A stretch of 64,000 nt of DNA from the IMG/VR virus record IMGVR_UViG_3300042453_005404, positions 62,001 to 126,000 of that record. One strand, written 5' to 3'. This document shows, in pieces, positions 45,065-60,925 of the stretch. The stretch's first letter is position 1, and every line of letters begins with the position of its first letter. A program made the position numbers and the translations under genes. The notes under the pieces were generated by a model, which saw nothing but the letters and a program-made list of their open reading frames with translations, searched no databases and was not told the origin of the DNA.

Positions 45065-45280
45065 ATGAAACAAGGTAAGCTATATCGTGTGAGGGCATCA
45101 TTTCCTACTGACGCAGAAGCCTTTAGATTTACCCATCTTGGTGATGTTGTGGTTGCGATTGAAACGATGGAAGATCATAACAACGTTATTTATTGGAAGG
45201 TTCTTACAGCGAACGCAGAGTTGGTAGCAATTGCTGAGAGGAACGTTCAATATTTTCTGGAGGATATGAAAAATGACTGA
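45065..45280 (+). CDS. Divergent SH3-like family member
   Basis: QGKLYRV...VVAIE...WKVLT.N. Confidence 0.55.
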   Translation: MKQGKLYRVRASFPTDAEAFRFTHLGDVVVAIETMEDHNNVIYWKVLTANAELVAIAERNVQYFLEDMKND

Positions 45281-45345
45281 GCCACGAACAGGCAAAGATC
45301 GTTTCTATTTCGCTTGTCACGGTACTTCAAACAAGTAGGAACAGC

Positions 45346-45570
45346 ATGATCGATCATTTGAAACTAGGTATGCTATTCGAATCAAAATGCGATTTCAAAT
45401 GTCTCGCAAGCACAAGTAATACACCAGTTCCACCAGTAGTTACCATTGAAAAAGGAGATCTTTTGGTTTTGATTGATTTCGAGGGTTATGAACATTATAG
45501 GTTTCTAGCCCCTGATGGTTCTACTGTGACAATGTATGGAACTTACAACTTAAAGAAAGTAGAAGAATGA
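45346..45570 (+). CDS. Divergent SH3-like family member
   Basis: LKLGMLF...IEKGDLLVLID...RFLAPDG. Confidence 0.5.
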   Translation: MIDHLKLGMLFESKCDFKCLASTSNTPVPPVVTIEKGDLLVLIDFEGYEHYRFLAPDGSTVTMYGTYNLKKVEE

Positions 45571-45767
45571 TTCATAAAGTATACATCGTTCGTTGTTCGT
45601 ATTGTCAAACTCCATTGTGTGAACCTCACGGTTTGGATCATCGACCCAGATATTTTTATCAACTTGATAGTATTCCACAAGCTATGAGTGAAGCAAACTG
45701 GGGTACAGTAAACGGATTGCAAGTTTGCAATCGTTGCCTAGAACGGCATCAACGATCAGAGTTTTAA
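45567..45767 (+). CDS. Small Zn-finger protein
   Basis: CSYC...CNRC. Confidence 0.55.
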   Translation: MIHKVYIVRCSYCQTPLCEPHGLDHRPRYFYQLDSIPQAMSEANWGTVNGLQVCNRCLERHQRSEF

Positions 45768-45770
45768 ACC

Positions 45771-45805
45771 TTTATATTTAACAAAACATCTGATATCCTA
45801 ACATC
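45771..45805 (+). promoter_or_regulatory. Leaderless sigma70-like promoter
   Basis: TTTATA-17-TATCCT-6-ATG(45806). Confidence 0.7.
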
Positions 45806-46960
45806 ATGGCAAAGATCATCACACATCGTACCCTTTTCACCCGTGATTCTCGTGGTTCCATTCGTACTTGGTACATGGAAACCAAAGGAGATAGCTATCG
45901 TACCGTTTCTGGTATTCTTGATACTCCTAGCTCTGTTGTTACATCAGAATGGACTGTGTGCGCAGGAAAGAATACTGGCCGTGCAAACGCTACAACTCCC
46001 GAGCAACAAGCTCTAAAGGAAGTAGAAAGCCGCTATACCAAGCAGCTTAAAACCGGTTACTTTGAGAATCAAAGCAACGTTGATGTTGCTCAATATGTCG
46101 AACCCATGCTAGCAAAGAGCTACGAAGATTATCGTGGCAAGCTAGACTTTTCTCCCGGTACTTGGTTTCTCAATGTCAAGTACAATGGTCTGCGTATGAT
46201 CGCAACCAAGGATGGACTGTTCACCCGTAAAGGTGAACGTTTCCTTTCAATCCCTCATATCGAAGAATCCCTTAAGCCATTCTTCCAGCAATATCCCAAC
46301 GCTGTTCTGGACGGTGAATGCTTCAACGAGCAGTATCGTCAAGAACTCAACGAGATTGTAAAGCTTGCTCGAAAGACCAAGAAAATCACCAAGGCAGACC
46401 TTGCCGAGAGTGAGCGTCTTATTCGTTATTACGTTTATGACGGTTATGGTTTTACTCCAGAACTAGGAGAAGATGCAGCATATCATAAGCGTAGGCTTTG
46501 GATCAACAGCAACGTTGTCAAGAAGTATGCTTATGTGGAAAAGATCGAGGATTGGCTTGTTAAGGATGAAGCACACATGATGGAGCTTTACAACAACATT
46601 GTGTCCCGTGGCCATGAAGGCGCTATTCTGCGTCTTGTTCGTATGCCTTATGAACACAAACGCAGCAAGAATCTTCTCAAGGTGAAGCCGTTGGAAGATG
46701 CTGAGTTTACGATTACCAACGTTCAAGAGGGTACAGGCAACTGGAGCGGTAAGGCTAAGATCATTTCTTTGCGTGATAGCAATGGCAAAGAGTTTGACGC
46801 TACCTTCAAGGGTACAATGGAAGATGCAGCGTACTTCTTGACCGTCAAGGATCAATGGATTGGCAAGGAAGTAACCGTGCAGTTTAATGGTTATACTGGT
46901 CTTGGTACCCCACAGTTTGCGCAACTAGACTACAAAAACATGGTTAAGGGTGACCGCTAA
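45806..46960 (+). CDS. lig: ATP-dependent DNA ligase
   Basis: EPMLA, KYNGLR (motif I), LDGE, YYVYD, EGAILR, LLKVKP, OB-fold C-terminus. Confidence 0.9.
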   Translation: MAKIITHRTLFTRDSRGSIRTWYMETKGDSYRTVSGILDTPSSVVTSEWTVCAGKNTGRANATTPEQQALKEVESRYTKQLKTGYFENQSNVDVAQYVEPMLAKSYEDYRGKLDFSPGTWFLNVKYNGLRMIATKDGLFTRKGERFLSIPHIEESLKPFFQQYPNAVLDGECFNEQYRQELNEIVKLARKTKKITKADLAESERLIRYYVYDGYGFTPELGEDAAYHKRRLWINSNVVKKYAYVEKIEDWLVKDEAHMMELYNNIVSRGHEGAILRLVRMPYEHKRSKNLLKVKPLEDAEFTITNVQEGTGNWSGKAKIISLRDSNGKEFDATFKGTMEDAAYFLTVKDQWIGKEVTVQFNGYTGLGTPQFAQLDYKNMVKGDR

Positions 46961-47046: not shown

Positions 47047-48117
47047 ATGAAGATCGGAATCGAAATCGAGTTCTACAGTCCCAAAAACATCACCGACACC
47101 ATTGCGGCTCTTCGTCGCAAGGTTCGTGGTCTTTCTATTGGTAGCTACGGTAGCTCTGGTTGGAAGATCGTGAGTGATGGTTCTCTTGCAACCATCGATA
47201 GCTTTCACGGCATGGAGCTTGTGTCTCCTGTGCTTGATACCGACAAGGCTGCTAACCTGCGCATGGTTCGCAAGGTGTGCGCTGCGTTGCAAGCTATGGG
47301 TAGCACGGTGAATAACTGCTGCGGTCTGCATGTTCATGTGGATGGTACCGATCTGTCGGTTGAGCAGATTAAGACGATTTTTCATCGCTATACCAAGTTT
47401 GAGGGTATGATCGATCTCATGGTTCCTGCTAATCGGCGTGGTACTAACGTGTACTATACCAAGGGTGGTACCAACATCATCAACAATGTGGAAAACTGTC
47501 AAACCATGAACGCTCTTATGCGTGTGCTGCCTGATCGTTACTACAAGGTGAACCTGTGTGCTCTGGGTCGTCATGGCACGATTGAGTTTCGGCAACACTC
47601 TGGGTCGATCAATGCGGATACCATTCTTAACTGGGTTGAGTTTCTTACTTCGTTTGTCGAAGCTTCCAAGATCACTCCTGCGGCTCCGCAACGTGCTCTT
47701 CGTGGTCGTCCGGCTTCTGGTACGGGCATGGCTGCTGGTTGCCGCAAGGTTTACGATGTGTTCATGGCTTCATACAACAACGGTGGTGGTACCTTGTACC
47801 TTGCCACGATTGCTAACCGTACCGGTCTTGCCATTAACAGCGTAAAGGTTGCAATCTCGACTCTTAAGACCAAGCACGGGATTGTGATTAAGAAGACTGC
47901 TGGACAGCAGCGTGGTGCTACCAACCCGATGTACACGATTGCAAACCCTCATGCGCAGCCTCGTTTGAATCCTGTGCGTTCTACTCGTAGCACTGCCAGT
48001 GCTCCCGCTACTCCTACTGACACGATTTGGCGTGGTGTTAGCAAGACTCTCAAGGCTTACTACGTCGAGCGCATTCAAGAGCTTTCGGGCTTCGGTGTTC
48101 AGAACGTTTCGCTGTGA
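47047..48117 (+). CDS. Putative amidoligase (Amidoligase_2/COOH-NH2 ligase) with C-terminal wHTH-like domain
   Basis: IGIEIEF, WKIVSDGSL, ELVSPVL, CGLHVHV, RYYKVN, TIEFRQHSG. Confidence 0.85.
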   Translation: MKIGIEIEFYSPKNITDTIAALRRKVRGLSIGSYGSSGWKIVSDGSLATIDSFHGMELVSPVLDTDKAANLRMVRKVCAALQAMGSTVNNCCGLHVHVDGTDLSVEQIKTIFHRYTKFEGMIDLMVPANRRGTNVYYTKGGTNIINNVENCQTMNALMRVLPDRYYKVNLCALGRHGTIEFRQHSGSINADTILNWVEFLTSFVEASKITPAAPQRALRGRPASGTGMAAGCRKVYDVFMASYNNGGGTLYLATIANRTGLAINSVKVAISTLKTKHGIVIKKTAGQQRGATNPMYTIANPHAQPRLNPVRSTRSTASAPATPTDTIWRGVSKTLKAYYVERIQELSGFGVQNVSL

Positions 48118-48449
48118 TGGTTGATGAAATGAACAATCTGCAACTTGGCAAAATGTATTTGGTTAAAGAGCTTTTCTGGCTTCTTTATCCAACGAAAGGT
48201 CTGGCAGGAGGGGCTGCGGACGGCTTCGGGGGGCATGGTTGGCGGTTGAAGAAGCTGACGACTGCTTATGAAACTGCAAAATGGGAGAGCGAAAGTTTCA
48301 ACTGCAATGTTGATGTTGTTGAAGAAAACACTTGCTTTGTTTTGCTTGAAGTAGACAACGGTTATTTCAAACTTCTTAACTCAAACGGTAACATTGGTTG
48401 GACTTGGGGTAGGGATTTCTTCGAGCATTTCGAACTTGTCAAGGAATAA
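48114..48449 (+). CDS. Hypervariable SH3-like protein, subfamily A copy 1
   Basis: LGKMYLVKE.FW.LYPTK-[variable]-CNV.VVEENTC.VLLE...GNIGW...FELVKE. Confidence 0.85.
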   Translation: MMVDEMNNLQLGKMYLVKELFWLLYPTKGLAGGAADGFGGHGWRLKKLTTAYETAKWESESFNCNVDVVEENTCFVLLEVDNGYFKLLNSNGNIGWTWGRDFFEHFELVKE

Positions 48450-48452
48450 GCA

Positions 48453-48767
48453 ATGAACAATCTGCAACTTGGTAAGATGTATTTGGTTAAAGAGTTTTTC
48501 TGGTTTCTTTTTCCAACAAAAGAACTAGCGGAGCGCCAGTGCAGGTGGTCGAGGGCGGGGGCCTCGACATCGGGGGCGACGGGGGTGGCAAAAGTGTTAA
48601 GCCAAAATTTTAAATGCAACATTTTTGTTGTTGAACCAAAGACTTGCTTTGTTTTGCTTGAAGTAGATGATGATTATTACAAGCTTCTTGACTCAAATGG
48701 TAACATTGGTTGGATTTTTAGTTGGGATTTCTCTGGTTGTTTCGAACTTGTAAAGGATTTATGTTGA
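48453..48767 (+). CDS. Hypervariable SH3-like protein A2
   Basis: Same framework; G-rich insert 48528-48587. Confidence 0.85.
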   Translation: MNNLQLGKMYLVKEFFWFLFPTKELAERQCRWSRAGASTSGATGVAKVLSQNFKCNIFVVEPKTCFVLLEVDDDYYKLLDSNGNIGWIFSWDFSGCFELVKDLC

Positions 48768-48798
48768 GAATATTTTCAGAGTATGATATACTTTTGAT
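48764..48798 (+). promoter_or_regulatory. Leaderless sigma70-like promoter (duplicated at 49431)
   Basis: TTGAGA-17-TATACT-6-ATG(48799). Confidence 0.8.
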
Positions 48799-49116
48799 AT
48801 GCTACAAATCGGTAAGATGTATTTGGTTAAAGAGTATTTCTGGTTTCTTTTTCCAACAAAAGAACTGGCGGTGGGGGCGATCGATCGCTTCGAGGGGCGG
48901 GCGTCGCAGGGCTGGGCGGCGACGGGGGCGGTGGTGGCAAAAGTGTTAAGCGAACGTTATAAATGCAACATTTTTGTTGTTGAACCAAAGACTTGCGTTG
49001 TTTTGCTTGAAATGGATGAAACCGAACATTGCTATAAGCTTCTTGATTGTAATGGAAACATTGGTTGGACTCGTTGTTGGAGTTTCGCCTCCTATTTCGA
49101 GCTTGTAAAGGAATAA
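48799..49116 (+). CDS. Hypervariable SH3-like protein A3
   Basis: Same framework; insert 48865-48936 is 57/72 GC. Confidence 0.85.
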   Translation: MLQIGKMYLVKEYFWFLFPTKELAVGAIDRFEGRASQGWAATGAVVAKVLSERYKCNIFVVEPKTCVVLLEMDETEHCYKLLDCNGNIGWTRCWSFASYFELVKE

Positions 49117-49122
49117 GCAACA

Positions 49123-49434
49123 ATGCAACTTGGTAAGATGTATTTGGTTAAAGATTGGTTTTGGTTTCTTTATCCAACAAAAGAACTGGCAAGGACGCCT
49201 GCGGCGAAGGCGAGCAGGGCGATGCGGCCCACGAGGGCGAGGGCGGGGATGGATGCGAAATGGTTGAGCCAAGAATTTAAATGCAACGTTGGTGTTGTTG
49301 AACCAAACACTTGCGTTGTGTTGCTTGAAGTAGATAATGGTTATTTTAAGCTTCTTGATTCGAATGGTAACATTGGTTGGATTATTTGTTGGAATGTCTC
49401 CAAAAATTTCGAACTTGTAAGGGATTTATGTTGA
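49123..49434 (+). CDS. Hypervariable SH3-like protein A4
   Basis: Same framework; insert 49191-49258. Confidence 0.85.
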   Translation: MQLGKMYLVKDWFWFLYPTKELARTPAAKASRAMRPTRARAGMDAKWLSQEFKCNVGVVEPNTCVVLLEVDNGYFKLLDSNGNIGWIICWNVSKNFELVRDLC

Positions 49435-49465: not shown

Positions 49466-49711
49466 ATGCTACAAATCGGTAAGATGTATAAAGTTCCGTG
49501 GTATGTTGAAGCTGACGAGTACATAGCTGGACGACTGATTGAGCGAATCAAACTAAAAGATGGCGATCTTGTTGTTGTTGTTAGCATGGAAGAATACCGT
49601 ATGGGCGGGGAGATTCGTTGGGACACAAAACTGCTGACAGGTGACGGAAGACTTGTATACGTTTCGATATCGCAACCGGGGTCTGCATACTGGAAAAAAG
49701 CACATGAATAG
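49466..49711 (+). CDS. Divergent SH3-like family member
   Basis: MLQIGKMY...LKDGDLVVVV...KLLTGDG. Confidence 0.7.
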   Translation: MLQIGKMYKVPWYVEADEYIAGRLIERIKLKDGDLVVVVSMEEYRMGGEIRWDTKLLTGDGRLVYVSISQPGSAYWKKAHE

Positions 49712-50003
49712 AAATCTTCAAATCGGAAAGCTGTATAAAACACCTTGGAAGACTTCTTCTTACGGAGCTTACATCAAGTTTGATGATCATGGCATGGTGC
49801 CTGACTACAACAGAAGCATCGACCTTCCAGATGGCGCATATGTTGTTTTGCTTGAAGTTAACGTGAATAAAGCTGAATATTTCTATAACAATAGAAAAGC
49901 CAACACATACGTTCTTAAGGTTCTAACAGAGGATGGTGCTGTTGCATATGTTACGTGCACAGAAGCTGGTTTGGATTACTGGAAAAAGGTTGTTCGTCCA
50001 TAA
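49704..50003 (+). CDS. Divergent SH3-like family member
   Basis: LQIGKLY...VVLLEV...KVLTEDG; start at MNRNLQ. Confidence 0.7.
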   Translation: MNRNLQIGKLYKTPWKTSSYGAYIKFDDHGMVPDYNRSIDLPDGAYVVLLEVNVNKAEYFYNNRKANTYVLKVLTEDGAVAYVTCTEAGLDYWKKVVRP

Positions 50004-50052: not shown

Positions 50053-50427
50053 ATGAAGCAGAAGAAGGCTGTTGTTCGTCGCAAAGGTTCGGTTTCCAGC
50101 AAAGTCAAACAACTGGATTGGATCATGCAGTTTATCATTCGCATGAATCCTTGTGCGATTTGTGGTGGTTCCTTGGCTGATGGGTACAATCCTCGTTATC
50201 CGGGTAAAAGCATCACGCTGCATCATTCCATCGGAAGCCGTGAAGTTGACGATTGGGAGAATCTGGAGTATGTAGCTGGTATGGTGCTGTGTCATTCTAC
50301 ATGCCACAAGAGCTATCATTTGAAGCGCAGACACATGGATGCGGGCAAGGATGTAAACGAGGGCGAGGTTGCGATCATGGAAAGCAATATTGCCAAGGTT
50401 GTGAAGAAGCAGAGGAAAGTAAAATGA
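50053..50427 (+). CDS. HNH endonuclease-like protein
   Basis: CAICG...TLHH...LCH..CH..YH. Confidence 0.7.
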   Translation: MKQKKAVVRRKGSVSSKVKQLDWIMQFIIRMNPCAICGGSLADGYNPRYPGKSITLHHSIGSREVDDWENLEYVAGMVLCHSTCHKSYHLKRRHMDAGKDVNEGEVAIMESNIAKVVKKQRKVK

Positions 50428-50642
50428 ATCACACGATTGGAAAAATGCATCAGTTTGTAGCCGTTCAACTACCGATTTATAATAGGATCGGAGACGTTCC
50501 GTTTGCTTACTTGGTACAGAATGAAGTTGTTGTTTTTCTTTCGAAAACAGATAAATACGTAAAGGTACTATTTGACGATGGCACCGTTGGAATAGTGCCT
50601 TATTTTCCAGAACGTGATCATTGGGTTGAATACACCGGTTAG
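50424..50642 (+). CDS. Divergent SH3-like family member
   Basis: TIGKMH...VVVFLS...VKVLFDDG.VG; start at MNHTIG. Confidence 0.65.
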   Translation: MNHTIGKMHQFVAVQLPIYNRIGDVPFAYLVQNEVVVFLSKTDKYVKVLFDDGTVGIVPYFPERDHWVEYTG

Positions 50643-50656: not shown

Positions 50657-50986
50657 ATGTCCGAATATATTGAATCCGAGACAAACTGTTGGAACAAATC
50701 ACCAATGAAACAAGGTAAACTGTATTACGGGCTTTGTGATCGAGAGGTGATCGAAGAAAAGCTTTTACCTCATTTTTTTGATGCTCATGAGATCAATGAT
50801 GTGATTGAGGTAGTAGACGCAGCATCACCGGTTGTATTCTTGGAAAAGACAATCACAAGGCGAGAGGATGGATACGGTGGTAGAGAAAGGTATCAAACCT
50901 TTATAAAGATTCTTACACCTGCTGGAAATATTGGTTGGGTTGTTTGGTTTGAAGGCGATTGGAAGGAAGTAAAATCATGTCAATAA
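50657..50986 (+). CDS. Divergent SH3-like family member
   Basis: QGKLYY...VVFLEK...KILTPAGNIGWV. Confidence 0.7.
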   Translation: MSEYIESETNCWNKSPMKQGKLYYGLCDREVIEEKLLPHFFDAHEINDVIEVVDAASPVVFLEKTITRREDGYGGRERYQTFIKILTPAGNIGWVVWFEGDWKEVKSCQ

Positions 50987-51486: not shown

Positions 51487-51828
51487 ATGATAAAAATATT
51501 GACAGGTGCCGAGCTAGTTCCCGGCAAAATGTATACTATTTGGGGGCGTTTGAATCGTGATACGTGGCCCGCATATCATCAACGACCAACTCTTCAATCA
51601 CCATCAACTGTTGCAACTGTTGCTCCATTGTTTCCATTGGAGCCATTTGTGTTTTTAGAACGCACGCCAAGTGAGTTTAGATGGAATGAAACCGATCCAA
51701 TGTATGACTACAAAATATTGACTTGTGACGGCGTTGTGGGCTGGCTATGCTTTCATGACGATGATTTGTCTGCTTTGGGTATTGGTTTTCGTGAATATGA
51801 TCCAAAAGACTTTGAAGTAAACCTTTAA
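51487..51828 (+). CDS. Divergent SH3-like family member
   Basis: LVPGKMY...FVFLE...KILTCDGVVGWL. Confidence 0.7.
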   Translation: MIKILTGAELVPGKMYTIWGRLNRDTWPAYHQRPTLQSPSTVATVAPLFPLEPFVFLERTPSEFRWNETDPMYDYKILTCDGVVGWLCFHDDDLSALGIGFREYDPKDFEVNL

Positions 51829-52363: not shown

Positions 52364-53503
52364 ATGATGAACGTTCACCCGGCTCTTCGTTTCTCGTTTG
52401 ACCATCTTCGCACGGCTCTTATGACCCGTGTGGATTCTGGTGCAATCAACATCACTCGCAAGGGTTCTCTGGCCCTTTTCAACTATTCCAAGGATTGTCA
52501 GTTTGAGCATCTTTGGGATGATTATACCATCATGGCCCGTGGTCTTATTCTCGACATGGAGAATGAGTCTATTGTGGCTCTTCCTTTTCCCAAGTTCTTC
52601 AATGCGTCGGAGAAGGAGGGTGCTAGTGTTGTCAAGTTTGATGCTCCCTTTGATGCGTATACCAAGATGGACGGATCGCTGGGTATCGTGTATTTCCACA
52701 ATGGTTCATGGCACGTTGCAACCCGTGGTTCGTTTACGTCCGAACAGTCTGTGTGGGCAGAGAAGTGGCTGCACGATAACCTCAAGCCTTATCACCAGCT
52801 TGATCAGAATGTGACATATCTTTGTGAGATTATCTATGACAGCAACCGTATTGTTATCAACTACCCTTTTGAGGGTTTGGTGATGCTTGGTGCTTATAAC
52901 CGTGTTACCGGCATTGAGCTTGACTATGATCGTGATTTGCGTCCGTTGTGTGAGCGTATCGGTATGATGCTTGCAGAGCGTCACCAGTTCACTTCATTTG
53001 TTGCTGCACAGGAGTTTGTCAAGACTCTTCCCGGCAACGAGGAAGGTTTCGTTATTCGTTTTCGGGATTCTGGCGAGCGTGTAAAGCTCAAGGGTTCTGA
53101 ATATTGCTCTTTGCACAAGATGATTAGCAACATTACTCCTTTGGCTATCTGGGAGCTTTTGTGTGCGGGTTACTCCATTGAAGATTACAAGAAGGCTTTG
53201 CCGGAAGAGTTTTGGGATGAGGTTGACGAGATTGTTGGTCATTTCCAGCGTCGTGCTGCTTGTGTTATGCTGGATGTTGTGAACCTTTATTCCGAGGTTT
53301 CTGATTTGTCTGACAAGGATCTTGGTTTGAAGCTGGCTGGCGAGTTCAAGCGTCGTGAGAATGCTTCGTTGCTGTTCCCTTATCGTAAGAAGGGAACGGC
53401 TTTGGTTCACGGTTTGGTGATGAAGTCTTTGCGGCCTACTGGAAACGTGATTGAGGGATATGTGCCGTCTGCCATGCTCCAGCGTTCTCAGTCGGAGGAA
53501 TGA
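52364..53503 (+). CDS. RNA ligase (T4 Rnl1-like)
   Basis: ARGLI...PFPKFFN, KMDGSLG, ATRGSF, EGFVI, VKLKG.EY. Confidence 0.9.
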   Translation: MMNVHPALRFSFDHLRTALMTRVDSGAINITRKGSLALFNYSKDCQFEHLWDDYTIMARGLILDMENESIVALPFPKFFNASEKEGASVVKFDAPFDAYTKMDGSLGIVYFHNGSWHVATRGSFTSEQSVWAEKWLHDNLKPYHQLDQNVTYLCEIIYDSNRIVINYPFEGLVMLGAYNRVTGIELDYDRDLRPLCERIGMMLAERHQFTSFVAAQEFVKTLPGNEEGFVIRFRDSGERVKLKGSEYCSLHKMISNITPLAIWELLCAGYSIEDYKKALPEEFWDEVDEIVGHFQRRAACVMLDVVNLYSEVSDLSDKDLGLKLAGEFKRRENASLLFPYRKKGTALVHGLVMKSLRPTGNVIEGYVPSAMLQRSQSEE

Positions 53504-53505
53504 TC

Positions 53506-53811
53506 ATGCAACTCGGCAAGATGTATTTGGTTAAAGAGCTTTTCTGGTTTCTTTATCCAACAAAAGAACGGGCGGAGTATGGGCGTGCGAGGGCGGCGTC
53601 CGTTGCGGCGATGGCGTGGCGGTGGGCGGCGAATAATGCAAAAGTGTTAAGCGAACGTTATAAATGCAACGTTTTTGTTGTTGAAGAAAACACTTGCGTT
53701 GTTTTGCTTGAAGTAGATGATGATTATTACAAGTTTCTTGATTGTAATGGAAACATTGGTTGGATTATTTGTCGGGATTTCTCCAACTATTTCGAGATTG
53801 CAAAGGAATAA
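53506..53811 (+). CDS. Hypervariable SH3-like protein A5
   Basis: Same framework; insert 53569-53631. Confidence 0.85.
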   Translation: MQLGKMYLVKELFWFLYPTKERAEYGRARAASVAAMAWRWAANNAKVLSERYKCNVFVVEENTCVVLLEVDDDYYKFLDCNGNIGWIICRDFSNYFEIAKE

Positions 53812-53817
53812 GCAACA

Positions 53818-54138
53818 ATGCAACTTGGTAAGATGTATTTGGTTAAAGAGCTTTTCTGGCTTCTCTTTCCAACAAAAGAAGTAGCGTGCGACCTTATGGC
53901 GATAGGCTGGGACAGCCCACTGGAGGCAACAGTGGAGAAGGGGCAGGCTTATCAAGAAGCAGACTATATAAGTGAACATATGTGTTGCGACGTTGCTGTG
54001 GTGGAAGAAAATACTTGTTTTGTGTTGCTTGAGCAAGATGAAAAGCTTTTCAAACTTCTTGATTGCAACGGTAACATTGGTTGGATATGGTGTAGGTGTT
54101 TGTCTTTTTCCAAGTATTTCGAACTTGTAAAGGAATAA
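53818..54138 (+). CDS. Hypervariable SH3-like protein A6
   Basis: Same framework; insert less GC-rich. Confidence 0.85.
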   Translation: MQLGKMYLVKELFWLLFPTKEVACDLMAIGWDSPLEATVEKGQAYQEADYISEHMCCDVAVVEENTCFVLLEQDEKLFKLLDCNGNIGWIWCRCLSFSKYFELVKE

Positions 54139-54144
54139 GCAACA

Positions 54145-54447
54145 ATGCAACTTGGTAAGATGTATTTGGTTAAAGAGTATTATTGGTTTATGTTTCCAAC
54201 AAAAGAACTAGCGGAGGCCATCGCCGCTGGACGGCGGGCGCTGGCCGCACTCGATGCGGGCGCTGCGGGACGGAGGGTGGCGAGCGAAGATTATAACTGC
54301 AACAACGTTTCTTTTGTTGAAGAAAACACTTACGTTGTTTTGCTTGAACAAGACAATGATTATATCAAAATTCTTGACTCAAATGGAAACATTGGTTGGA
54401 TTGTTTGTTGGGATTTTTCCGACTTTTTCGAACTTGTAAAGGAATAA
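54145..54447 (+). CDS. Hypervariable SH3-like protein A7
   Basis: Same framework; insert from 54211. Confidence 0.85.
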   Translation: MQLGKMYLVKEYYWFMFPTKELAEAIAAGRRALAALDAGAAGRRVASEDYNCNNVSFVEENTYVVLLEQDNDYIKILDSNGNIGWIVCWDFSDFFELVKE

Positions 54448-54453: not shown

Positions 54454-54750
54454 ATGCAACTTGGTAAGATGTATCGTTTTACAGAAAGAGCAAAACGAGC
54501 TTGCATAAGGTATGCAATCAAAAACCGTTGGCCTCTCACGTTCTCTTCCGAGGTTAGTCTCGCAAAAGGTCGAGTGCGGGCGCAATATCCATTGGATTCA
54601 TGCATTGTTGTGTTAGAGTCTCACGAAACAACAACTTCTGGAAAGCTTTTGTCTGGTAAAACATCACGCAGACTTAAGGTTTTACTTCCTGATGGTAAGA
54701 TTGGTACGATGTATGTGGATACAACAGAATGGGAACAGGTAACTGAATGA
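54454..54750 (+). CDS. Divergent SH3-like family member sharing only MQLGKMY with the array
   Basis: Identical upstream junction, then divergent; KVLLPDGKIG. Confidence 0.7.
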   Translation: MQLGKMYRFTERAKRACIRYAIKNRWPLTFSSEVSLAKGRVRAQYPLDSCIVVLESHETTTSGKLLSGKTSRRLKVLLPDGKIGTMYVDTTEWEQVTE

Positions 54751-55259: not shown

Positions 55260-55466
55260 ATGGGATACGTAAAAGACATGGTGCTTCACAAGCAAGAAGA
55301 GCTTGCTGGTGAGATTCACGAAGATGCTTTTCTCGCTTATCTGGAAGAGATGGAGCAGATTCAAAACAATCACATTCTGGCAGATCATGTGATTCTTAGC
55401 AATGGCAAGCGTTGCTATATTCAAGCGAACTGTTATCCTGCTGACGGTGTGTGTGAGTGCAAGTAA
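55260..55466 (+). CDS. Hypothetical protein
   Basis: MGYVKDM.. N-terminus; TAATG-coupled to A8. Confidence 0.6.
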   Translation: MGYVKDMVLHKQEELAGEIHEDAFLAYLEEMEQIQNNHILADHVILSNGKRCYIQANCYPADGVCECK

Positions 55467-55741
55467 TGCAACTCGGTAAGATGCATTTGGTTAAAGAGTG
55501 GTTTTGGTTTCTTTATCCAACAAAAGAAAAGACGTGGCGCTCGGGGCCAGCGGCGAGGGCGGATAATGCAAAATTGTTAAGCGAACATGTCCAATGCAAC
55601 GTTTTTGTTGTTGAACCAAACACTTGTGTTGTTTTGCTTGAAGTAGATAATGGTTATTTTAAGCTTCTTGATTCAAACGGAAACATTGGTTGGATTCGTT
55701 GTTGGAGTTTCGCCTCCTATTTCGAGCTTGTAAAGGAATAA
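55466..55741 (+). CDS. Hypervariable SH3-like protein A8
   Basis: Same framework; shortest insert 55529-55561. Confidence 0.85.
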   Translation: MQLGKMHLVKEWFWFLYPTKEKTWRSGPAARADNAKLLSEHVQCNVFVVEPNTCVVLLEVDNGYFKLLDSNGNIGWIRCWSFASYFELVKE

Positions 55742-55747
55742 GCAACA

Positions 55748-56047
55748 ATGCAACTTGGTAAGATGTATTTGGTTAAAGATTGGTTTTGGTTTCTTTATCC
55801 AACAAAAGAACTGGCGATGCGTGGGCGGAGCTCGGGGGAGGGGGCGATGACGCTGGCGAACGGGCGGCTGGGCGCAGAATGGTTGAGCCAAGAATTTAAA
55901 TGCAACGTTGGTGTTGTTGAACCAAACACTTGCTTTGTCTTGCTTGAAGTAGATGAAGTATATTTCAAGGTTCTTGATTGTAATGGAAACATTGGTTGGA
56001 CTTATTGCTTTGATTTCTCTGGTTATTTCGAACTTGTAAAGGAATAA
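55748..56047 (+). CDS. Hypervariable SH3-like protein A9
   Basis: Flanks identical to A4; insert 55816-55877. Confidence 0.85.
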   Translation: MQLGKMYLVKDWFWFLYPTKELAMRGRSSGEGAMTLANGRLGAEWLSQEFKCNVGVVEPNTCFVLLEVDEVYFKVLDCNGNIGWTYCFDFSGYFELVKE

Positions 56048-56051
56048 AGCA

Positions 56052-56351
56052 ATGAACGATCTTCAACTCGGTAAGATGTATTTGGTTAAAGAGTGGTTTT
56101 GGTTTCTTTATCCAACAAAAGAACTGGCGGCGGGGTTCTCGTCGCCGTCGAGGGCGGAGTGGTGGTGTAATGCAAAAGTGTTAAGCGAACGTTATAAATG
56201 CAACGTTTTTGTTGTTGAACCAAACACTTGCGTTGTTTTGCTTGAAGTAGATAATGGTTATTTTAAGCTTCTTGATTCAAACGGTAACATTGGTTGGATA
56301 TGGTGTAGGTGTTTGGCTTTTTCCAAGCATTTCGAACTTGTCAAGGAATAA
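56052..56351 (+). CDS. Hypervariable SH3-like protein A10
   Basis: Insert 56124-56165, 13/14 codons NNG. Confidence 0.85.
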   Translation: MNDLQLGKMYLVKEWFWFLYPTKELAAGFSSPSRAEWWCNAKVLSERYKCNVFVVEPNTCVVLLEVDNGYFKLLDSNGNIGWIWCRCLAFSKHFELVKE

Positions 56352-56355
56352 AGCA

Positions 56356-56688
56356 ATGCAACTTGGTAAGATGTATTTGGTTAAAGAGTATTGTTGGTTT
56401 CTTTATCCAACAAAAGAACTGGCCTCGACGACGGGGCCACGGTGGTCGAGCGTGAGGCGGTGGCCCTCCGACGAGGAGCGCACGGTGGCTTATCGAGATG
56501 CAAAATGGTTGAGCCAAGCATTTAAATGCAACGTTGGTGTTGTTGAACCAAAAACTAGTTTTGTCTTGCTTGAACAAGACAAGGATCATTTCAAGGTTCT
56601 TGATTCAAACGGAAACATTGGTTGGATTCGTAGCGATGATTTTTCGAAAAATTTCAAGGTTTTGAATGAAAAGAAGAATAACCTTTAG
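56356..56688 (+). CDS. Hypervariable SH3-like protein A11
   Basis: Start at MQLGKMY (56356); insert from 56419. Confidence 0.85.
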   Translation: MQLGKMYLVKEYCWFLYPTKELASTTGPRWSSVRRWPSDEERTVAYRDAKWLSQAFKCNVGVVEPKTSFVLLEQDKDHFKVLDSNGNIGWIRSDDFSKNFKVLNEKKNNL

Positions 56689-57489: not shown

Positions 57490-57883
57490 ATGGAAAACAA
57501 ACATAAGCACTTTACAGTATTCAACAATCGATGGTTTATGCTGTTTCGAGAGCAAGCAGGAGTGATTAGCGAAAGCCCTTGTTGGGTTTTGTTTTACGAC
57601 TGTTATTCGCATTACAACGAATCTTTGATCAAGCTTTTGATTGAAGCTGCAAGAGAATACAAAAGCGATAGACACCTAGCAATGTAAGTCAAAAATGAAC
57701 AACGACGAAAAGCAAAAACTTATCGACGATTTCGAAAAAGCTATTAGCGAGATTCGTGTGTTGCGTTACACTTCTCCAGATGAAGAGCTAAAAGGTCTTA
57801 GAGTTCATTTGTTTGAGAATGAATGGGATAGGTTGGAGCACACTATTAGAGAACTAAGAAAGAATGAAACCGAAGAAAGGTAA
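57490..57883 (+). CDS. Two small hypothetical proteins (57490-57687, 57695-57883)
   Basis: Consecutive co-directional ORFs. Confidence 0.5.
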
Positions 57884-58148
57884 GCTTTACACACTAGAGC
57901 TTAAATGGAACACAGATCCTGCGAATATCAGATCTGTTGCTGTATGGAATCGCAGACTTGATGTTGGTGACTTTATGGATAAATCATTAGTGATAGGCAG
58001 AATCGAATACAACAAAGATATGTTTATCTTTTTGGAAGATGGAACAAACGGATTTAGCCAAAAGAGTCCAAAGATTTTGACCAGCGATGGAGTTGTTGGG
58101 TATATTGTGCCAAACTATGATATCTGTTCGATGAAACGGGTTAAGTAG
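57864..58148 (+). CDS. Divergent SH3-like family member
   Basis: KKGKLYTL...FIFLEDG...KILTSDGVVGYI. Confidence 0.7.
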   Translation: MKPKKGKLYTLELKWNTDPANIRSVAVWNRRLDVGDFMDKSLVIGRIEYNKDMFIFLEDGTNGFSQKSPKILTSDGVVGYIVPNYDICSMKRVK

Positions 58149-58161
58149 AAAGAAGACGACT

Positions 58162-59364
58162 ATGAGCGAACGTTATCAGATTATAATCAAGGCTGGGGAG
58201 CATACTTTTCATTTCAAAACCAAGACAAGGGTTGGGGAGTTTTGGAACTTCTCAGAGGAGATGAAGGAGCATATTGATTGGGAGCAGATGGCTATTGGAT
58301 TGGACAAAAAGACCAAGGAAGTTTTGGACTCTGTGAGTTGTCCTAAGTGTAAGTCTAGCACACAGGAAACATTTATGGAGGGTCAGTATCTTGTTCCTTC
58401 TAGTGACAGGGATGCTATTATCAAGGCTTGCACTAAATGTCAGTGGTCTAGGTTGGAGCGACTATGAGTGATATAAAGTTTCCAGTTGTATCAAAAGAAA
58501 TTATTGACAAAGTTTTTACTTCTGATGATGGATGGACTACTGTATATGAGGGTCCAACCATCGTAAGCAGTGCAAGTATTATGCCACAGATTTATGTGCC
58601 GCTTCAAGTTTCTCATATATTCAAGAAGGAAGATAAAGAATGAAACGCTATTATGCCAAGGCTGACACATGGTTCAAGGAAGGAACGGAAGCGTTTAGAG
58701 AAGAAGAGATGTTTCCTTATGGTAGTTTGACTGATGGTGAAACTGGAGAGAAAACGGGCTCAGCGATTTATCGTGGGATTTACGTTATTGGATCTGGTGG
58801 CAGCTATCTTGATAAATCATACAAAGAAGGGGAAGAAGTTGAGATGCGAGAACATTGCTCGGACGATGAGTTTCTTGTGGTAGAGGAATAGGTTATGGGA
58901 ATAAATGGGGATACCAAGGATATTGGTTGGATTCAATGTAGCCAATGTGGGTGGGGTTGTGAAGTACATCGTTCAGAAGTTGAGATTGGGGATTATGTAG
59001 ATCGGCAATCATGTCCTGATTGTGGTCTTGGGCCATGTGAGATTGATTGGGATTATCCAGATGGTAAGGGTTGGGTAGCAGAAAAAGTTTGACTTATTGA
59101 TAATGGTATGATAGTTTAAACCTATCGAAAGCAAAGGAAAATATGAAAGCAACGTTTAAGTCATTTGTCGAAGGCGAGAAGCGATTCATTGTAGTAGGTG
59201 AGCCTCATGTATATCAGAATGGATTCCTTGTCACTTGTATTGATACAAGCACTGGAGAAACCGAAAGCAAAACTATCGCAAGCTCTGAGAGACTTGATCT
59301 ATGTGAGTTCGAACTAAAATGCCTTGGTAAAGTTGTTTGGGAAAAGAAGCTTATCCCAGTATGA
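58162..59364 (+). CDS. Run of five small hypothetical proteins (58162-58467 Zn-ribbon, 58464-58643, 58640-58891, 58895-59092 Zn-ribbon, 59143-59364)
   Basis: Coupled ORFs; CxxC pairs in two; 58464-58643 read manually. Confidence 0.55.
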
Positions 59365-59756
59365 CAGAGATAGAAGAAGAAAGAATGTGGCTCAAGTGTT
59401 TGGAGCTGGAACGAGAGAATAAACGTCTTCGTGAAATAATGAACATCGGATCGCTTTATACAGTGAAGAAGTATTTTTGGTTGCTTTTTCCAACAAAAGC
59501 CCTCACCGTGGGTGACGAACTGCACGCCGATGGCCACGGCCACGCCATCCCCTTCGCCGCCTTCGCCTCCATCGCCGCCGATTATTGGAGCAGACGATAC
59601 AACTGTGAAGTTACTTATTTTTGTCCTGATTCAATCGTTGTTTTCCTTGAAGAAGATGGAAATTACAAGAAAGTTCTGACTTCAGATGGAAAGATTGGTT
59701 GGATTTGGTTTGCTGAAGAATACTACAACGATTGCTTTGAGGAAGTAAATCCATGA
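59361..59756 (+). CDS. Hypervariable SH3-like protein, subfamily B copy 1 (with 26-aa N-terminal extension; core starts 59439)
   Basis: MNIGSLY.VKK.FW.LFPTK-[C-rich insert 59499-59579]-YWS...CEV.YF.PDS..VFLEEDG...KVLTSDGKIGW. Confidence 0.85.
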   Translation: MTEIEEERMWLKCLELERENKRLREIMNIGSLYTVKKYFWLLFPTKALTVGDELHADGHGHAIPFAAFASIAADYWSRRYNCEVTYFCPDSIVVFLEEDGNYKKVLTSDGKIGWIWFAEEYYNDCFEEVNP

Positions 59757-60052
59757 ACATTGGAAGCCTTTATAGGGTTAAGAAGTTTTATTGGTTGCTT
59801 TTTCCAACAAAAGAAATCGCCGCTGTAGCAGAACACCCCGCCTCCTCCCCCAGCGCCGCCGCCCTCGCCGCCGCCAGCGCCTATTGGAGCGGCCAGCTGA
59901 ACTGTGAAGTAACTTGTTTTTCTCCTGATTCCATTATTGTATTTCTTGAAGAAGATGGGAAATACAAGAAGGTTCTGACTTCTGAAGGAAGAATCGGATG
60001 GACTTGGTTTATTGAATCATATAACGAATGCTTTGAGGAAGTAAATCCATGA
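59753..60052 (+). CDS. Hypervariable SH3-like protein B2
   Basis: 16 consecutive NNC codons at 59834-59881. Confidence 0.85.
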   Translation: MNIGSLYRVKKFYWLLFPTKEIAAVAEHPASSPSAAALAAASAYWSGQLNCEVTCFSPDSIIVFLEEDGKYKKVLTSEGRIGWTWFIESYNECFEEVNP

Positions 60053-60363
60053 ACATTGGATCGCTTTATACAGTGAAGAAGTATTTTTGGTTTCTTTTTT
60101 CAACAAAAGCCGTCGCCGCCGCCGCATCCGACCCACCGTCCACCGCCGCATCCGACGCACCGTCCGCCGCCGCCGCCGGAGAAGCCGCTGCTTATTTGAG
60201 CAGACGATACGACTGTGAAGTTACTTATTTTTCTCCTGATTCCATCGTTGTTTTCCTTGAAAATGATGGAAAACTCAAGAAAGTATTGACTTCTGATGGA
60301 AAGATTGGTTGGACTTGGTTTAGTGAAACCTATAACGAATGCTTTGAGGAAGTAAATCCATGA
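60049..60363 (+). CDS. Hypervariable SH3-like protein B3
   Basis: C-rich insert with an internal 24-nt duplication. Confidence 0.85.
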   Translation: MNIGSLYTVKKYFWFLFSTKAVAAAASDPPSTAASDAPSAAAAGEAAAYLSRRYDCEVTYFSPDSIVVFLENDGKLKKVLTSDGKIGWTWFSETYNECFEEVNP

Positions 60364-60665
60364 ACATTGGATCGCTTTATACAGTGAAGAAGTGGTCTTG
60401 GTCACTTTTTCCAACAAAGGAAACTGCCGCCGCCGCCGCCGCAAGCAGCCCCGCCGCCGCAGGAGCCGCTCCCGACGCCGCTCCCGCCGCTGATTATTGG
60501 AGCAAACAGTTAAACTGCAATGTAACCTACTTTTCTCCTGATTCCTATATTGTCTTCTTGGAAGAAGATACGAAGTTCAAGAAAGTTCTTACTTCTACTG
60601 GAAAGCTTGGTTGGGTTTGGTTTGATGAAAGTTATAATCATTGTTTTGAGGAAGTATCGTCGTGA
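60360..60665 (+). CDS. Hypervariable SH3-like protein B4
   Basis: (GCC)5 run and GCCGCTCCC duplication in the insert. Confidence 0.85.
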   Translation: MNIGSLYTVKKWSWSLFPTKETAAAAAASSPAAAGAAPDAAPAADYWSKQLNCNVTYFSPDSYIVFLEEDTKFKKVLTSTGKLGWVWFDESYNHCFEEVSS

Positions 60666-60925
60666 GGATTCTTCAAGGTGCAACAGCCGTAGATGTTAAC
60701 GATGTGATACTGGATATAGGTGGATTATATCATTATCCATACAGCGTATGTCTTCGTGAAAACGATTGCAAAGCACACGGCTCAGTTGTTGATCAATACA
60801 CTCCATTTGTTGTATTAGAGTTTATTGAAGGGCTTTCCGGCAAGTATCTAAGAATTCTTACCACAACTGGAGAGATTGGTCTTGTACAATACAACTCAAG
60901 ATACTTGAAGCAGATTGAGAAGTAA
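60662..60925 (+). CDS. Divergent SH3-like family member
   Basis: IGGLYHY...FVVLEF...RILTTTGEIGLV; GTG start. Confidence 0.6.
   Translation: MRILQGATAVDVNDVILDIGGLYHYPYSVCLRENDCKAHGSVVDQYTPFVVLEFIEGLSGKYLRILTTTGEIGLVQYNSRYLKQIEK

What the first reader, a model, noticed from the sequence alone, without database searches (positions are those of the whole stretch)
45065..60925. About ten divergent members extend the family to ~25 genes in 16 kb, forming an apparent age series
Seen: ORFs at 45065, 45346, 49466, 49704, 50424, 50657, 51487, 54454, 57864 and 60662 retain G(K/M)(L/M)Y near the start, a V.(F/L)LE-like strand and K(V/I)L..DG..G near the end, with AT-rich unrelated loops. A1 and A6 have loops of intermediate GC. 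Inference: a continuum from new (GC-rich loop) to old (ameliorated loop) members, meaning long-term expansion of one scaffold.
Basis: partly seen in the sequence, partly recalled or inferred. Interest (0 to 1): 0.6.

Follow-up and report, generated by a model that had tools for sequence, protein, structure and literature searches.

The report
Divergent members of phage SH3-like family
A lake-dwelling T4-like giant phage carries about 40 small genes built on one SH3-like barrel; nine, perhaps all ten, of the flagged odd ORFs belong to it, but they are stable single-copy relatives without the GC-rich variable hairpin, not a smooth age series.

Summary
The ten ORFs exist. Eight are paralogues of the 15 arrayed copies: profile-profile probability is 91.5-96.8%, against 0.7% or less for 18 of 19 control ORFs and 25% for one. 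ORF 45065 is probable (88-91% against a broader profile). ORF 45346 is borderline by sequence, but its model has the same seven-strand SH3-like barrel.

The family is unnamed in Pfam, PHROGs and NCBIfam. It is a distant branch of bacterial SH3 domains. It has about 40 members in this 260-kb T4-like lake phage, including two more arrays outside the window.

The arrayed copies carry a two-helix hairpin in what I take to be the RT loop. Its tip is a 36-78-nt segment of 57-86% GC, GC-rich at all codon positions, in a 36% GC framework. The divergent ORFs have a shorter connection there or none, and often a longer loop at another position, so their loops are not decayed versions of the GC-rich one.

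Framework score and loop GC fall into two classes with a wide gap. Loop GC survives the deepest split inside the array clade. It is no higher in strain-specific copies than in widely shared ones.

Long-term growth of one scaffold, with stable singletons and fast-changing arrays, is supported. Loop GC as a clock is not. Function is unknown; a repertoire of intracellular binders is my best guess.

The parts
45065..45280 (+). Divergent ORF (71 aa from this ATG; gene callers start at 45047, 77 aa). Probable family member.
   Evidence: Iterated HMM E 0.81, which is noise. hhalign gives 41% over 13 aa against the close copies, and 88-91% (E about 1e-6) over residues 1-53 against the broader profile. 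An orthologue in L002 is 87% identical.
45346..45570 (+). Divergent ORF, 74 aa. Borderline family member with an SH3-like fold.
   Evidence: hhalign 9% against close copies and 29-62% against the broader profile. It has the ordered motif triple. The AF2 model has pLDDT 83 and seven strands in the same order as the close copy, with a 9-aa loop where that copy has the hairpin. Its fold-search list is dominated by SH3 domains and overlaps the close copy's list.
49466..49711 (+). Divergent member, 81 aa; paralogue of 49704; lacks the helical hairpin.
   Evidence: HMM E 0.18, but hhalign gives 96.1% (E 4e-9) over its full length, with a 31-residue gap at the hairpin.
49704..50003 (+). Divergent member, 99 aa; long loop after the core strand.
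   Evidence: Iterated HMM E 2e-5. hhalign 95.2%. There are 20 aa between the core strand and the K.L..DG motif.
50424..50642 (+). Divergent member, 72 aa.
   Evidence: Iterated HMM E 5e-12. hhalign 93.7%. The orthologue in L018 is 98.6% identical.
50657..50986 (+). Divergent member, 109 aa, with a 16-aa N-terminal extension.
   Evidence: First-pass HMM E 1e-3, iterated 1e-8. hhalign 96.7%. Only 72% identical between near strains.
51487..51828 (+). Divergent member, 113 aa (some gene callers give 59 aa).
   Evidence: Iterated HMM E 2e-9. hhalign 96.2%. Counterparts in L002 and L008 are 40-47% identical.
54454..54750 (+). Divergent member, 98 aa, directly behind array B. Its first seven residues are the same as in the array copies.
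   Evidence: Iterated HMM E 1e-5. hhalign 96.8% over its full length. It has the same HMM score in L015, L017 and L018.
57864..58148 (+). Divergent member, 94 aa.
   Evidence: Iterated HMM E 9e-6. hhalign 94.6%. It has the same HMM score in L005, L006, L015 and L016.
60662..60925 (+). Divergent member, 87 aa, GTG start, directly behind array D.
   Evidence: Iterated HMM E 1e-9. hhalign 91.5%. Orthologues are 94% (L007) and 64% (L001) identical.
48117..49434 (+). Array A: four close copies (48117-48449, 48453-48767, 48799-49116, 49123-49434), downstream of an amidoligase gene.
   Evidence: HMM scores 139-157 bits. Loop GC is 0.61, 0.77, 0.78 and 0.76. Related strains have 2, 3 or 0 copies here.
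53500..54447 (+). Array B: three close copies (53500-53811, 53818-54138, 54145-54447), downstream of an Rnl1-type RNA ligase gene.
   Evidence: HMM scores 143-153 bits. Loop GC is 0.70, 0.57 and 0.80. Related strains have 2 or 1 copies here.
55466..56688 (+). Array C: four close copies (55466-55741, 55748-56047, 56052-56351, 56356-56688), upstream of a metallophosphatase gene.
   Evidence: HMM scores 142-156 bits. Loop GC is 0.72, 0.77, 0.67 and 0.69. The AF2 model of the second copy has pLDDT 90.4. Other strains have 2 to 8 copies, with the same first and last copies.
59439..60665 (+). Array D: four close copies of a distinct sub-clade (59439-59756, 59753-60052, 60049-60363, 60360-60665). The first may start at 59361.
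   Evidence: HMM scores 132-135 bits. Loop GC is 0.72, 0.79, 0.79 and 0.86, C-rich on the coding strand. The four form one clade, with support 97/100. Other strains have 6 or 10 copies.

Best explanation
The flagged region is the core of a large gene family specific to one phage lineage. Its proteins are about 100 aa, stand alone, and fold as an SH3-like beta-barrel distantly related to bacterial SH3 domains.

The family has two kinds of member.
1. Array copies. There are 15 in the region and 22 in the genome. They carry a two-helix hairpin inserted in what I take, from the order of strands, to be the RT loop. The hairpin tip is a short, GC-rich, highly variable segment.
2. Single-copy members. 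They share the barrel and the N-terminal strand. Their connection at the hairpin site is shorter or missing, and several have a longer loop at the site I take to be the n-Src loop.

Shown:
- homology of eight ORFs;
- the fold;
- the position of the variable segment;
- copy-number change between strains;
- stability of the singletons;
- two classes rather than a gradient.

Inferred:
- The arrays grow and shrink by unequal homologous recombination between the conserved frameworks.
- Loop variants are inherited as stable cassettes and are occasionally replaced.
- The singletons are the older, fixed layer of the family.
- The proteins act inside the host cell as a set of binders. Their specificity would lie in the two loops that flank the usual SH3 ligand groove. 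They would take part in host takeover or counter-defence, like the early-type repair genes they are mixed with.
For: Homology:
- hhalign gives 91.5-96.8% for eight ORFs, against 0.7% or less for 18 of 19 control ORFs and 25% for one.
- The iterated HMM reached 34 members with no reversed decoy.

Fold:
- The AF2 model has pLDDT 90.4. It has strands at 6-9 and 13-17, helices at 20-28 and 39-50, then four strands, a short helix and a last strand.
- SH3 domains fill nearly all of the Foldseek list (probability 0.97-0.99). Bacterial SH3 domains lead the VIA list (Z 7.4).
- The family profile matches the repeats of a protein made of 17 SH3_3 domains.

Variable segment:
- It covers residues 24-43 of the model, including the only stretch of lower confidence.
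- Loop GC at codon positions 1, 2 and 3 is 0.70, 0.68 and 0.76, against 0.43, 0.28 and 0.36 in the framework.

Turnover:
- There are 60 loop types among 82 distinct copies in about nine strain contigs, and array contents differ between strains.
- 19 of 32 between-strain pairs with 95% or higher framework identity have identical loops. A few have very different ones.
- One trio of alleles has flanks with no difference over most of the gene and a loop of about 55 nt full of substitutions and indels.

Context:
- The same strand carries genes for an AAA_33 kinase, DNA ligase, Rnl1-type RNA ligase, metallophosphatase and RNase_T-type exonuclease.
- The phage has a T4-type capsid gene.
Against: - No experiment or known relative bears on function. 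The fold matches have middling scores (Z below 8), and an SH3-like barrel is common.
- 45065 and 45346 are not supported by the close-copy profile alone.
- The assignment of the hairpin to the RT loop, and of the second variable site to the n-Src loop, rests on strand order in one model, not on an explicit superposition.
- Only one divergent member was folded. Its five models ranged from pLDDT 38 to 83.
- The strain contigs are metagenomic and partial, so an absent copy may be a gap in the assembly.
- The cause of the GC-richness is unexplained.
Confidence: 0.65

Rival explanations
1. Every new copy is born with a GC-rich loop, which then decays towards the AT-rich genome composition. Loop GC therefore dates the copies, and the ten divergent ORFs are the oldest, fully decayed end of one continuous series.
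For: Across all 37 members, framework score and loop GC correlate (rho 0.79). Among the 18 non-D close copies, loop GC rises with framework similarity (rho 0.61, p 0.007). The two lowest-GC loops of the 15 belong to two of the more isolated copies. In 204 metagenomic relatives, the share of G, A, R and P in the loop falls with distance from this phage's copies (rho 0.52).
Against: The overall correlation comes from two separate classes; within each it is not significant. The D clade is the most diverged array clade and has the highest loop GC. Shared and lineage-specific loops of array C have the same GC. No pair of copies is younger than 11% framework divergence, yet loop GC3 is 0.76. The nearest paralogues have loops at or close to the identity of shuffled sequence, so a GC-biased loop generator would have to be assumed, and no candidate was found. 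Divergent ORFs are 11-34 aa shorter at the hairpin site.
Confidence: 0.15
2. Loop GC is maintained by exchange between copies. Recombination between array members forms heteroduplex DNA that is mismatched mainly in the loops, and a GC-biased repair of those mismatches keeps the loops GC-rich. Members without partners (the singletons) drift to the genome composition. Under this model, GC reports how much a copy recombines, not its age.
For: GC-richness is at all three codon positions. It is confined to the clade that forms arrays. It tracks similarity to the other copies. The nearest framework relatives often lie in other arrays, which suggests exchange between arrays. Variable third positions of the framework are more GC-rich than invariant ones, 0.42 against 0.17.
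Against: The L008 lineage has a tandem array with loops of only 0.46-0.56 GC. Within L001, L007 and L015, best-partner identity does not predict loop GC. The rise at variable framework sites is far below the loop value. Strand skew is specific to each clade, which a symmetrical repair bias does not predict. GC-rich patches also occur in single-copy genes.
Confidence: 0.15
3. The divergent ORFs are unrelated small SH3-like proteins. Their likeness to the arrays would be a shared common fold plus a few chance motifs.
For: SH3-like barrels are frequent among small phage proteins. The first-pass HMM gives only E 1e-3 to 2. For five ORFs, only the C-terminal 26-43 residues align.
Against: Eight ORFs score 91.5% or more, while 18 of 19 neighbouring small ORFs score 0.7% or less and one scores 25%. 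The ordered motif triple occurs nowhere else in 1219 ORFs. All lie on the same strand among the arrays, and two directly abut an array.
Confidence: 0.07
4. The loops are diversified by a dedicated mutator: a diversity-generating retroelement, or untemplated synthesis at a break.
For: Variation is sharply bounded, with unchanged flanks. Loop change is all-or-none between strains. GC is high at silent positions.
Against: No reverse transcriptase, family X polymerase palm domain or NTP_transf_2 domain was found in the 260-kb record. No loop has a template copy elsewhere in the genome. Alleles differ by indels and at all four bases. Most orthologous loops are identical where their frameworks differ by 1-4%. 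The record is estimated to be about 70% complete, so absence is not proven.
Confidence: 0.05

Closest known systems
Bacterial SH3 domains (SH3b; Pfam SH3_3, PF08239), as in the N-terminal domains of NlpC/P60 peptidases and in phage endolysins
   Same: The barrel fold, and a C-terminal core with a hydrophobic strand, a tight Gly-containing turn and an aromatic residue. The top structural matches are 2evr, 3h41 and 4krt. The family profile matches a protein of 17 SH3_3 repeats.
   Different: These proteins stand alone, are about 100 aa, and have no catalytic or wall-binding partner domain. They carry a 31-residue helical hairpin insertion. They occur as about 40 paralogues in one phage. They score below the Pfam threshold (14.5 bits against 27).
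Variable proteins of diversity-generating retroelements (for example Bordetella phage Mtd)
   Same: They are phage-encoded, with a sharply bounded variable segment in an otherwise constant protein.
   Different: There is no reverse transcriptase or template repeat, and the fold is not a C-type lectin. Variation is spread over many paralogues and strains rather than regenerated in one gene. It includes indels and changes at all four bases.
Engineered SH3 binders with randomised RT and n-Src loops (Fynomers; a complex with chymase, 4afz, is in the Foldseek list)
   Same: A constant SH3 barrel whose variation is concentrated at the sites I assign to the RT loop (array copies) and the n-Src loop (several singletons). 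This is a likeness in how it may work, not in descent.
   Different: This is a natural family. The RT-site insert is a helical hairpin, not a short loop. Binding has not been shown.
Hyperplastic regions of T4-like phages (blocks of small early genes of unknown function that differ between relatives; from general knowledge of T4 genomics)
   Same: Small, same-strand genes interleaved with ligase, kinase and exonuclease genes, and variable between close strains.
   Different: Here most of the block is one family in tandem arrays, with a defined fold and a defined variable segment.
In-frame GC-rich or palindromic inserts in AT-rich genomes (yeast mitochondrial GC clusters, Rickettsia palindromic elements; from general knowledge)
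   Same: Short GC-rich stretches inside reading frames of an AT-rich genome, translated as surface segments.
   Different: The loops share no sequence with each other beyond what composition gives. They do not fold better than shuffled controls. They always sit at one structural site of one family.

Membership tests
The window's own array family (15 close copies) | Significant match to a profile of the close copies | tested here: met
   Met for eight of ten ORFs, at hhalign 91.5-96.8%. Seven of the ten also pass the iterated HMM. 45065 passes only against the broader profile, at 88-91%. 45346 reaches 29-62%.
The window's own array family (15 close copies) | Same strand order in the fold | tested here: inconclusive
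   Only 45346 was folded. Its seven strands are in the same order and the hairpin is replaced by a 9-aa loop, but the five models ranged from pLDDT 38 to 83.
The window's own array family (15 close copies) | Two-helix hairpin with a GC-rich variable tip between strand 2 and strand 3 | tested here: not met
   The divergent ORFs have 25-44 aa where the close copies have 55-59 aa. Their best 45-nt GC window is 0.42-0.56. They are family members of a different sub-type.
Bacterial SH3 domain (Pfam SH3_3, PF08239) | Score over the Pfam gathering threshold | tested here: not met
   The best is 14.5 bits against a cut-off of 27, for one close copy.
Bacterial SH3 domain (Pfam SH3_3, PF08239) | SH3-type barrel | tested here: met
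   Foldseek and VIA lists are dominated by SH3 and SH3b domains for both models. The scores are middling (Z 7.4 and 7.8).
Bacterial SH3 domain (Pfam SH3_3, PF08239) | Sequence link through intermediate proteins | tested here: met
   The family profile hits a protein of 17 SH3_3 repeats at E 2e-16, over 10 stretches at profile positions 53-88.
Diversity-generating retroelement target | Reverse transcriptase nearby or elsewhere in the genome | tested here: not met
   PF00078 has no match in the 260-kb record. The record may be incomplete.
Diversity-generating retroelement target | A template repeat that differs from the variable region at adenines only | tested here: not met
   No loop has a second copy in the genome. 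Alleles differ by indels and at all four bases.
In-frame mobile GC-rich or palindromic elements | Copies share sequence and form a hairpin | tested here: not met
   Loop identity between paralogues is at the level of shuffled controls (0.45-0.56 against 0.49). Folding z-scores run from -1.2 to +1.3.

The most novel reading that the evidence does not exclude
A widespread freshwater T4-like phage would keep a heritable repertoire of intracellular binding proteins that differs from strain to strain. It would consist of one SH3 scaffold in dozens of copies, each with its own helical-hairpin tip. The tips would be made or maintained by a GC-biased, site-restricted process that is neither a retroelement nor ordinary point mutation. 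The same process would also seed GC-rich linker segments in other genes of the phage.
Probability: 0.15. Interest if true: 0.85.

Novelty: new variant of a known kind. Interest (0 to 1): 0.6.

Why it matters
Phage gene families that vary in a bounded segment are few, and the best-known ones depend on retroelements. Here a common fold (SH3) makes up about 40 genes of one phage. The variation sits where SH3 domains usually meet their ligands. Gene content differs between strains found in many lakes.

If the proteins are binders aimed at host factors, the arrays would record an arms race. They would also be a natural library on a small, well-behaved scaffold.

The GC-rich composition of the variable segments in an AT-rich genome is a separate puzzle, and it may point to an undescribed bias in phage recombination or repair.

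For the scan itself, the lesson is narrower. Loop composition should not be read as age.

Tried and rejected
- Pfam, PHROGs and NCBIfam scans of close and divergent members gave nothing over threshold. A sequence profile against PDB chains gave nothing.
- GenBank phage collection: no match to the family as protein. No DNA match to a 2.3-kb stretch holding the DNA ligase and amidoligase genes, just upstream of array A.
- The viral-contig scan with the phosphatase found no relative.
- ESM Atlas look-ups for 45065 and 45346 returned only unnamed clusters.
- Word searches for 45065 and 45346 found only close orthologues, so their alignments stayed shallow.
- Diversity-generating retroelement: rejected.
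- Family X polymerase or nucleotidyltransferase: none found.
- RNA structure in the loops: none beyond composition.
- Foreign DNA captured in random orientation: unlikely, because 16 of the 17 loops measured in arrays A, B, C, E and F are G-rich on the coding strand and all four D loops are C-rich.
- Two apparent cases of the same loop in different frameworks come from copies cut off by contig ends, and I do not use them.
- The promoter and terminator scan was not above the shuffled expectation.
- Contigs laid from four lake runs cannot show variation within a population. They only show that the single-copy stretches are constant and the arrays are fragmented, with other loops joined to the same frameworks.
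- Three literature searches found no description of such a family.
- One genome-wide hhalign run timed out. I repeated it on the plus strand of genome positions 45,000-135,000 only.

Full report
SETTING

The window is bases 62,001-126,000 of a single 260,466-bp virus record of 40% GC. The record encodes a T4-type major capsid protein (PF07068, E 2e-64). It also carries 13 tRNAs, 12 of which have anticodons starting with U or G. Near-identical DNA is held by lake, freshwater and drinking-water metagenomes from 15 studies.

The flagged 16 kb lies in a block of small genes on one strand. Mixed in are genes for an AAA_33 kinase, an ATP-dependent DNA ligase, an amidoligase, an Rnl1-type RNA ligase, a metallophosphatase and an RNase_T-type exonuclease. 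Locus L004 is the same genome (100% identity over 17,997 bases), so I used it only for its gene calls.

THE OBSERVATION

All ten ORFs exist and are called as genes on identical or related contigs.

I built an HMM from the 15 close copies and scored all 2,767 stop-to-stop ORFs of the genome. The results were as follows.
- Seven more close copies appear outside the window: four at genome 49,532-50,767 and three at 129,967-131,199.
- There is then a wide gap, from 87.6 bits down to 29.3 bits.

Iterating with an inclusion threshold of 1e-3 converged at 34 members. No reversed-sequence decoy was included, and the best decoy scored E 0.02. Seven of the ten ORFs were taken in, at E 5e-12 to 2e-5.

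Profile-profile comparison used each ORF aligned with its orthologues from related contigs, against 79 non-redundant close copies. It gave 91.5-96.8% for eight ORFs. These include 49466, which the HMM had missed and which aligns over its whole length. Eighteen of 19 neighbouring small ORFs used as controls gave 0.7% or less, and one gave 25% over 14 residues.

Against a profile that also holds the divergent members:
- 45065 reaches 88-91% over residues 1-53;
- 45346 reaches 29-62%;
- the controls stay at 21% or less.

It is present in only two of 1,219 other ORFs, and those two are 49466 and 45346.

The count of about 25 genes in 16 kb therefore stands: 23 secure, one probable and one borderline. 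Genome-wide the family has about 40 members. Three further probable ones lie outside the window.

WHAT THE PROTEINS ARE

No curated library names the family, and the GenBank phage collection holds no relative. The word search found 65 relatives, all metagenomic and unnamed. The exhaustive profile search found 389 cluster representatives at E 1e-3 or better, nearly all about 100 aa.

An AlphaFold2 model of copy 55748-56047, made with 91 aligned sequences, is confident (pLDDT 90.4). Its elements, in order, are:
- two short strands;
- helix 20-28;
- a lower-confidence turn;
- helix 39-50;
- four strands;
- a short helix;
- a last strand.

SH3 domains fill nearly all of the Foldseek list. The exhaustive structural search is led by bacterial SH3 domains of NlpC/P60 peptidases and of a phage endolysin (Z 7.4, 6.5 and 6.3). 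Those values are middling but consistent.

There is also a link at sequence level. The family profile matches ten repeats of a 1,160-aa protein that Pfam reads as 17 SH3_3 domains.

Going by strand order, the helical hairpin sits in the RT loop. The conserved hydrophobic strand, the K.L strand and the Gly-rich turn are then strands b and c and the distal loop. This assignment is my inference, not a superposition.

THE VARIABLE SEGMENT

In the close copies, a stretch of 12-26 codons is 57-86% GC, against 32-39% in the rest of the gene. It corresponds to model residues 24-43: the end of helix 1, the turn and the start of helix 2. The excess is at all three codon positions (0.70, 0.68 and 0.76, against 0.43, 0.28 and 0.36). 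Amino-acid choice alone therefore does not explain it.

Twenty of the 33 islands of 70% GC or more in the genome are these loops. Others encode linkers rich in Ala, Gly, Pro and Arg in unrelated genes.

Further properties of the loops:
- They have no second copy in the genome.
- They have no secondary structure beyond what their composition gives.
- They are open in 3-6 of 6 reading frames, against a mean of 3 of 6 in the framework.
- They are G-rich on the coding strand in 16 of the 17 loops measured in arrays A, B, C, E and F, and C-rich in array D.

No reverse transcriptase, family X polymerase palm domain or NTP_transf_2 domain was found.

HOW THE ARRAYS BEHAVE

Related contigs show different copy numbers. 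L015-L018 and L005-L007 are 98-100% identical in the flanking phosphatase. L001-L003 are about 86% identical in flanking DNA. L008 is about 80% identical in the phosphatase.

| Array | Copies in this genome | Copies in related strains |
|---|---|---|
| A | 4 | 2, 3 or 0 |
| B | 3 | 2 or 1 |
| C | 4 | 7, 8, 5 or 2 |
| D | 4 | 6 or 10 |

Across these contigs, 82 distinct copies carry 60 loop types. In array C the first and last copies are shared, and the inner ones differ as blocks.

Loops are inherited stably. Nineteen of 32 between-strain pairs with 95% or higher framework identity have identical loops, even where the frameworks differ by 1-4%. A few pairs are very different. In one trio of alleles there is no difference over 93 bases upstream or over most of the gene downstream, yet a stretch of about 55 bases is full of substitutions and indels.

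Below about 90% framework identity, the loops are close to the identity of shuffled sequence.

Within this genome no two frameworks exceed 89% identity. Array D is one clade. Copies of arrays A, B, C, E and F are intermingled, and the nearest relative of a copy often lies in another array.

Contigs from four lake runs cover the single-copy stretches 54,445-55,514 and 56,602-58,200 mostly without a single difference. They break up in the arrays, and some join the same frameworks through other GC-rich letters. I kept the laid stretch at 4,801 letters. The standard code was used throughout.

THE DIVERGENT ORFS COMPARED WITH THE ARRAY COPIES

The spacer between the start motif and the core strand is 55-59 residues in close copies. 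It is 25-44 residues in the nine divergent ORFs where it could be measured. ORF 49466 aligns with a 31-residue gap exactly at the hairpin.

The model of 45346 has a best pLDDT of 83, but two of its five models were poor. It has seven strands in the same order, with a 9-residue loop in place of the hairpin. Its structural matches are again SH3 domains, several of them the same entries as for the close copy.

Five divergent ORFs have 14-20 residues between the core strand and the K.L strand, where the close copies have 6. By my assignment this is the n-Src loop.

The divergent ORFs are therefore a different sub-type of the family, not array copies whose loop has decayed. Those the HMM detects keep the same position and nearly the same score in every near strain that covers them. 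Several have counterparts in the L001 and L008 lineages, at 34-66% identity. This shows they are old, and also that they evolve fast.

THE AGE SERIES

Against a clock:
- The family falls into two classes, with no significant trend inside either.
- The deepest split within the array clade (D against the rest, 61-71% framework identity) has left both sides GC-rich.
- In array C, loops shared by three or four lineages are as GC-rich as lineage-specific ones (0.69 against 0.67; n = 3 and 11).
- One divergent member outside the window has a 0.71 GC patch.
- The L008 lineage has a tandem array with loops of only 0.46-0.56 GC.

For a graded relation:
- Among the 18 non-D copies, loop GC rises with framework similarity to the others (rho 0.61, p 0.007, not corrected for shared ancestry).
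- In 204 metagenomic relatives, the share of Gly, Ala, Arg and Pro in the loop falls with distance from this phage's copies.

Both trends fit decay in isolated copies. They fit equally well a GC bias that acts only where copies still exchange sequence. A weak hint for the second reading is that variable third positions of the framework are more GC-rich than invariant ones (0.42 against 0.17).

I conclude that GC-richness is maintained in the array clade. It cannot be read as youth. Its cause is open.

FUNCTION

Nothing here tests function. My reading is that this is a set of small cytoplasmic binders used in host takeover or counter-defence. It rests on five points:
- a fold that usually mediates binding;
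- variation at the two loops that flank the usual SH3 ligand site;
- no signal peptide by eye;
- turnover between strains;
- neighbours of early, repair-type function.

I give this functional part about one chance in three. The family assignment and its architecture are much firmer.

VERDICT

The broad inference of long-term expansion of one scaffold is supported. The specific continuum from new GC-rich loops to old decayed loops is not. The family itself is an undescribed, hypervariable, multi-copy use of the SH3 fold in a common lake phage, and it merits follow-up.

Noticed in passing
genome 49,532-50,767 and 129,967-131,199 (outside the window, about 12 kb before its start and 4-5 kb after its end): Two more tandem arrays of close copies (four and three), with GC-rich loops. 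Further divergent members lie at genome 50,763, 53,317, 126,538, 128,137 and 128,701. Probable ones lie at 50,984, 52,039 and 128,424.
   Followed up: partly
genome 174,010-174,146; 258,846-259,029; 47,000-47,087; 52,752-52,832; 212,136-212,190; window 44,444-44,509: GC-rich patches (70-84% GC). Several lie inside unrelated genes, where they encode stretches rich in Ala, Gly, Pro and Arg. The GC-rich insert phenomenon is therefore not confined to the SH3-like family.
   Followed up: partly
L006:4181-4513, L007:5516-5845, L015:13692-14009: Three alleles of one D-type copy. They are identical over 93 bases upstream and over most of the gene downstream, but differ by many substitutions and three indels in about 55 bases of the loop.
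   Followed up: partly
window 44582-45043, 45806-46960, 47041-48117, 52364-53503, 56719-57477, 60965-61552: Kinase (AAA_33), DNA ligase, amidoligase, Rnl1-type RNA ligase, metallophosphatase and RNase_T-type exonuclease genes are interleaved with the arrays. Each array abuts one of the last four. The set recalls the T4 nucleic-acid repair genes.
   Followed up: no
window 48764-48792, 49431-49459, 60930-60958: Three plus-strand promoter-like sites have near-identical hexamers and a TG extension, and sit in intergenic gaps next to arrays. The scan as a whole is not above chance.
   Followed up: no
window 41212-41916 and 41920-42555, minus strand: Two adjacent paralogous genes (234 and 211 aa). 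By eye their motifs resemble the Arg, Ser and Glu motifs of ADP-ribosyltransferases. Pfam gives no match.
   Followed up: partly
window 53647-54150, 48946-49272, 56605-57450, minus strand, and others: Long antisense or out-of-frame ORFs run through the arrays. Where they cross the loops they stay open because the loops lack stop codons in most frames. They are unlikely to be genes.
   Followed up: partly
window 59361-59756 and 51487-51828: Start-codon uncertainty. One gene caller starts the first D copy at 59361, giving 131 aa with a charged N-terminal extension. ORF 51487 is called at 113 aa on one related contig and at 59 aa on two others.
   Followed up: no
P0166 (metagenomic protein, 1,160 aa): A protein of 17 bacterial SH3 repeats is matched by the family profile. 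It gives the only sequence bridge from this family to a named domain.
   Followed up: partly
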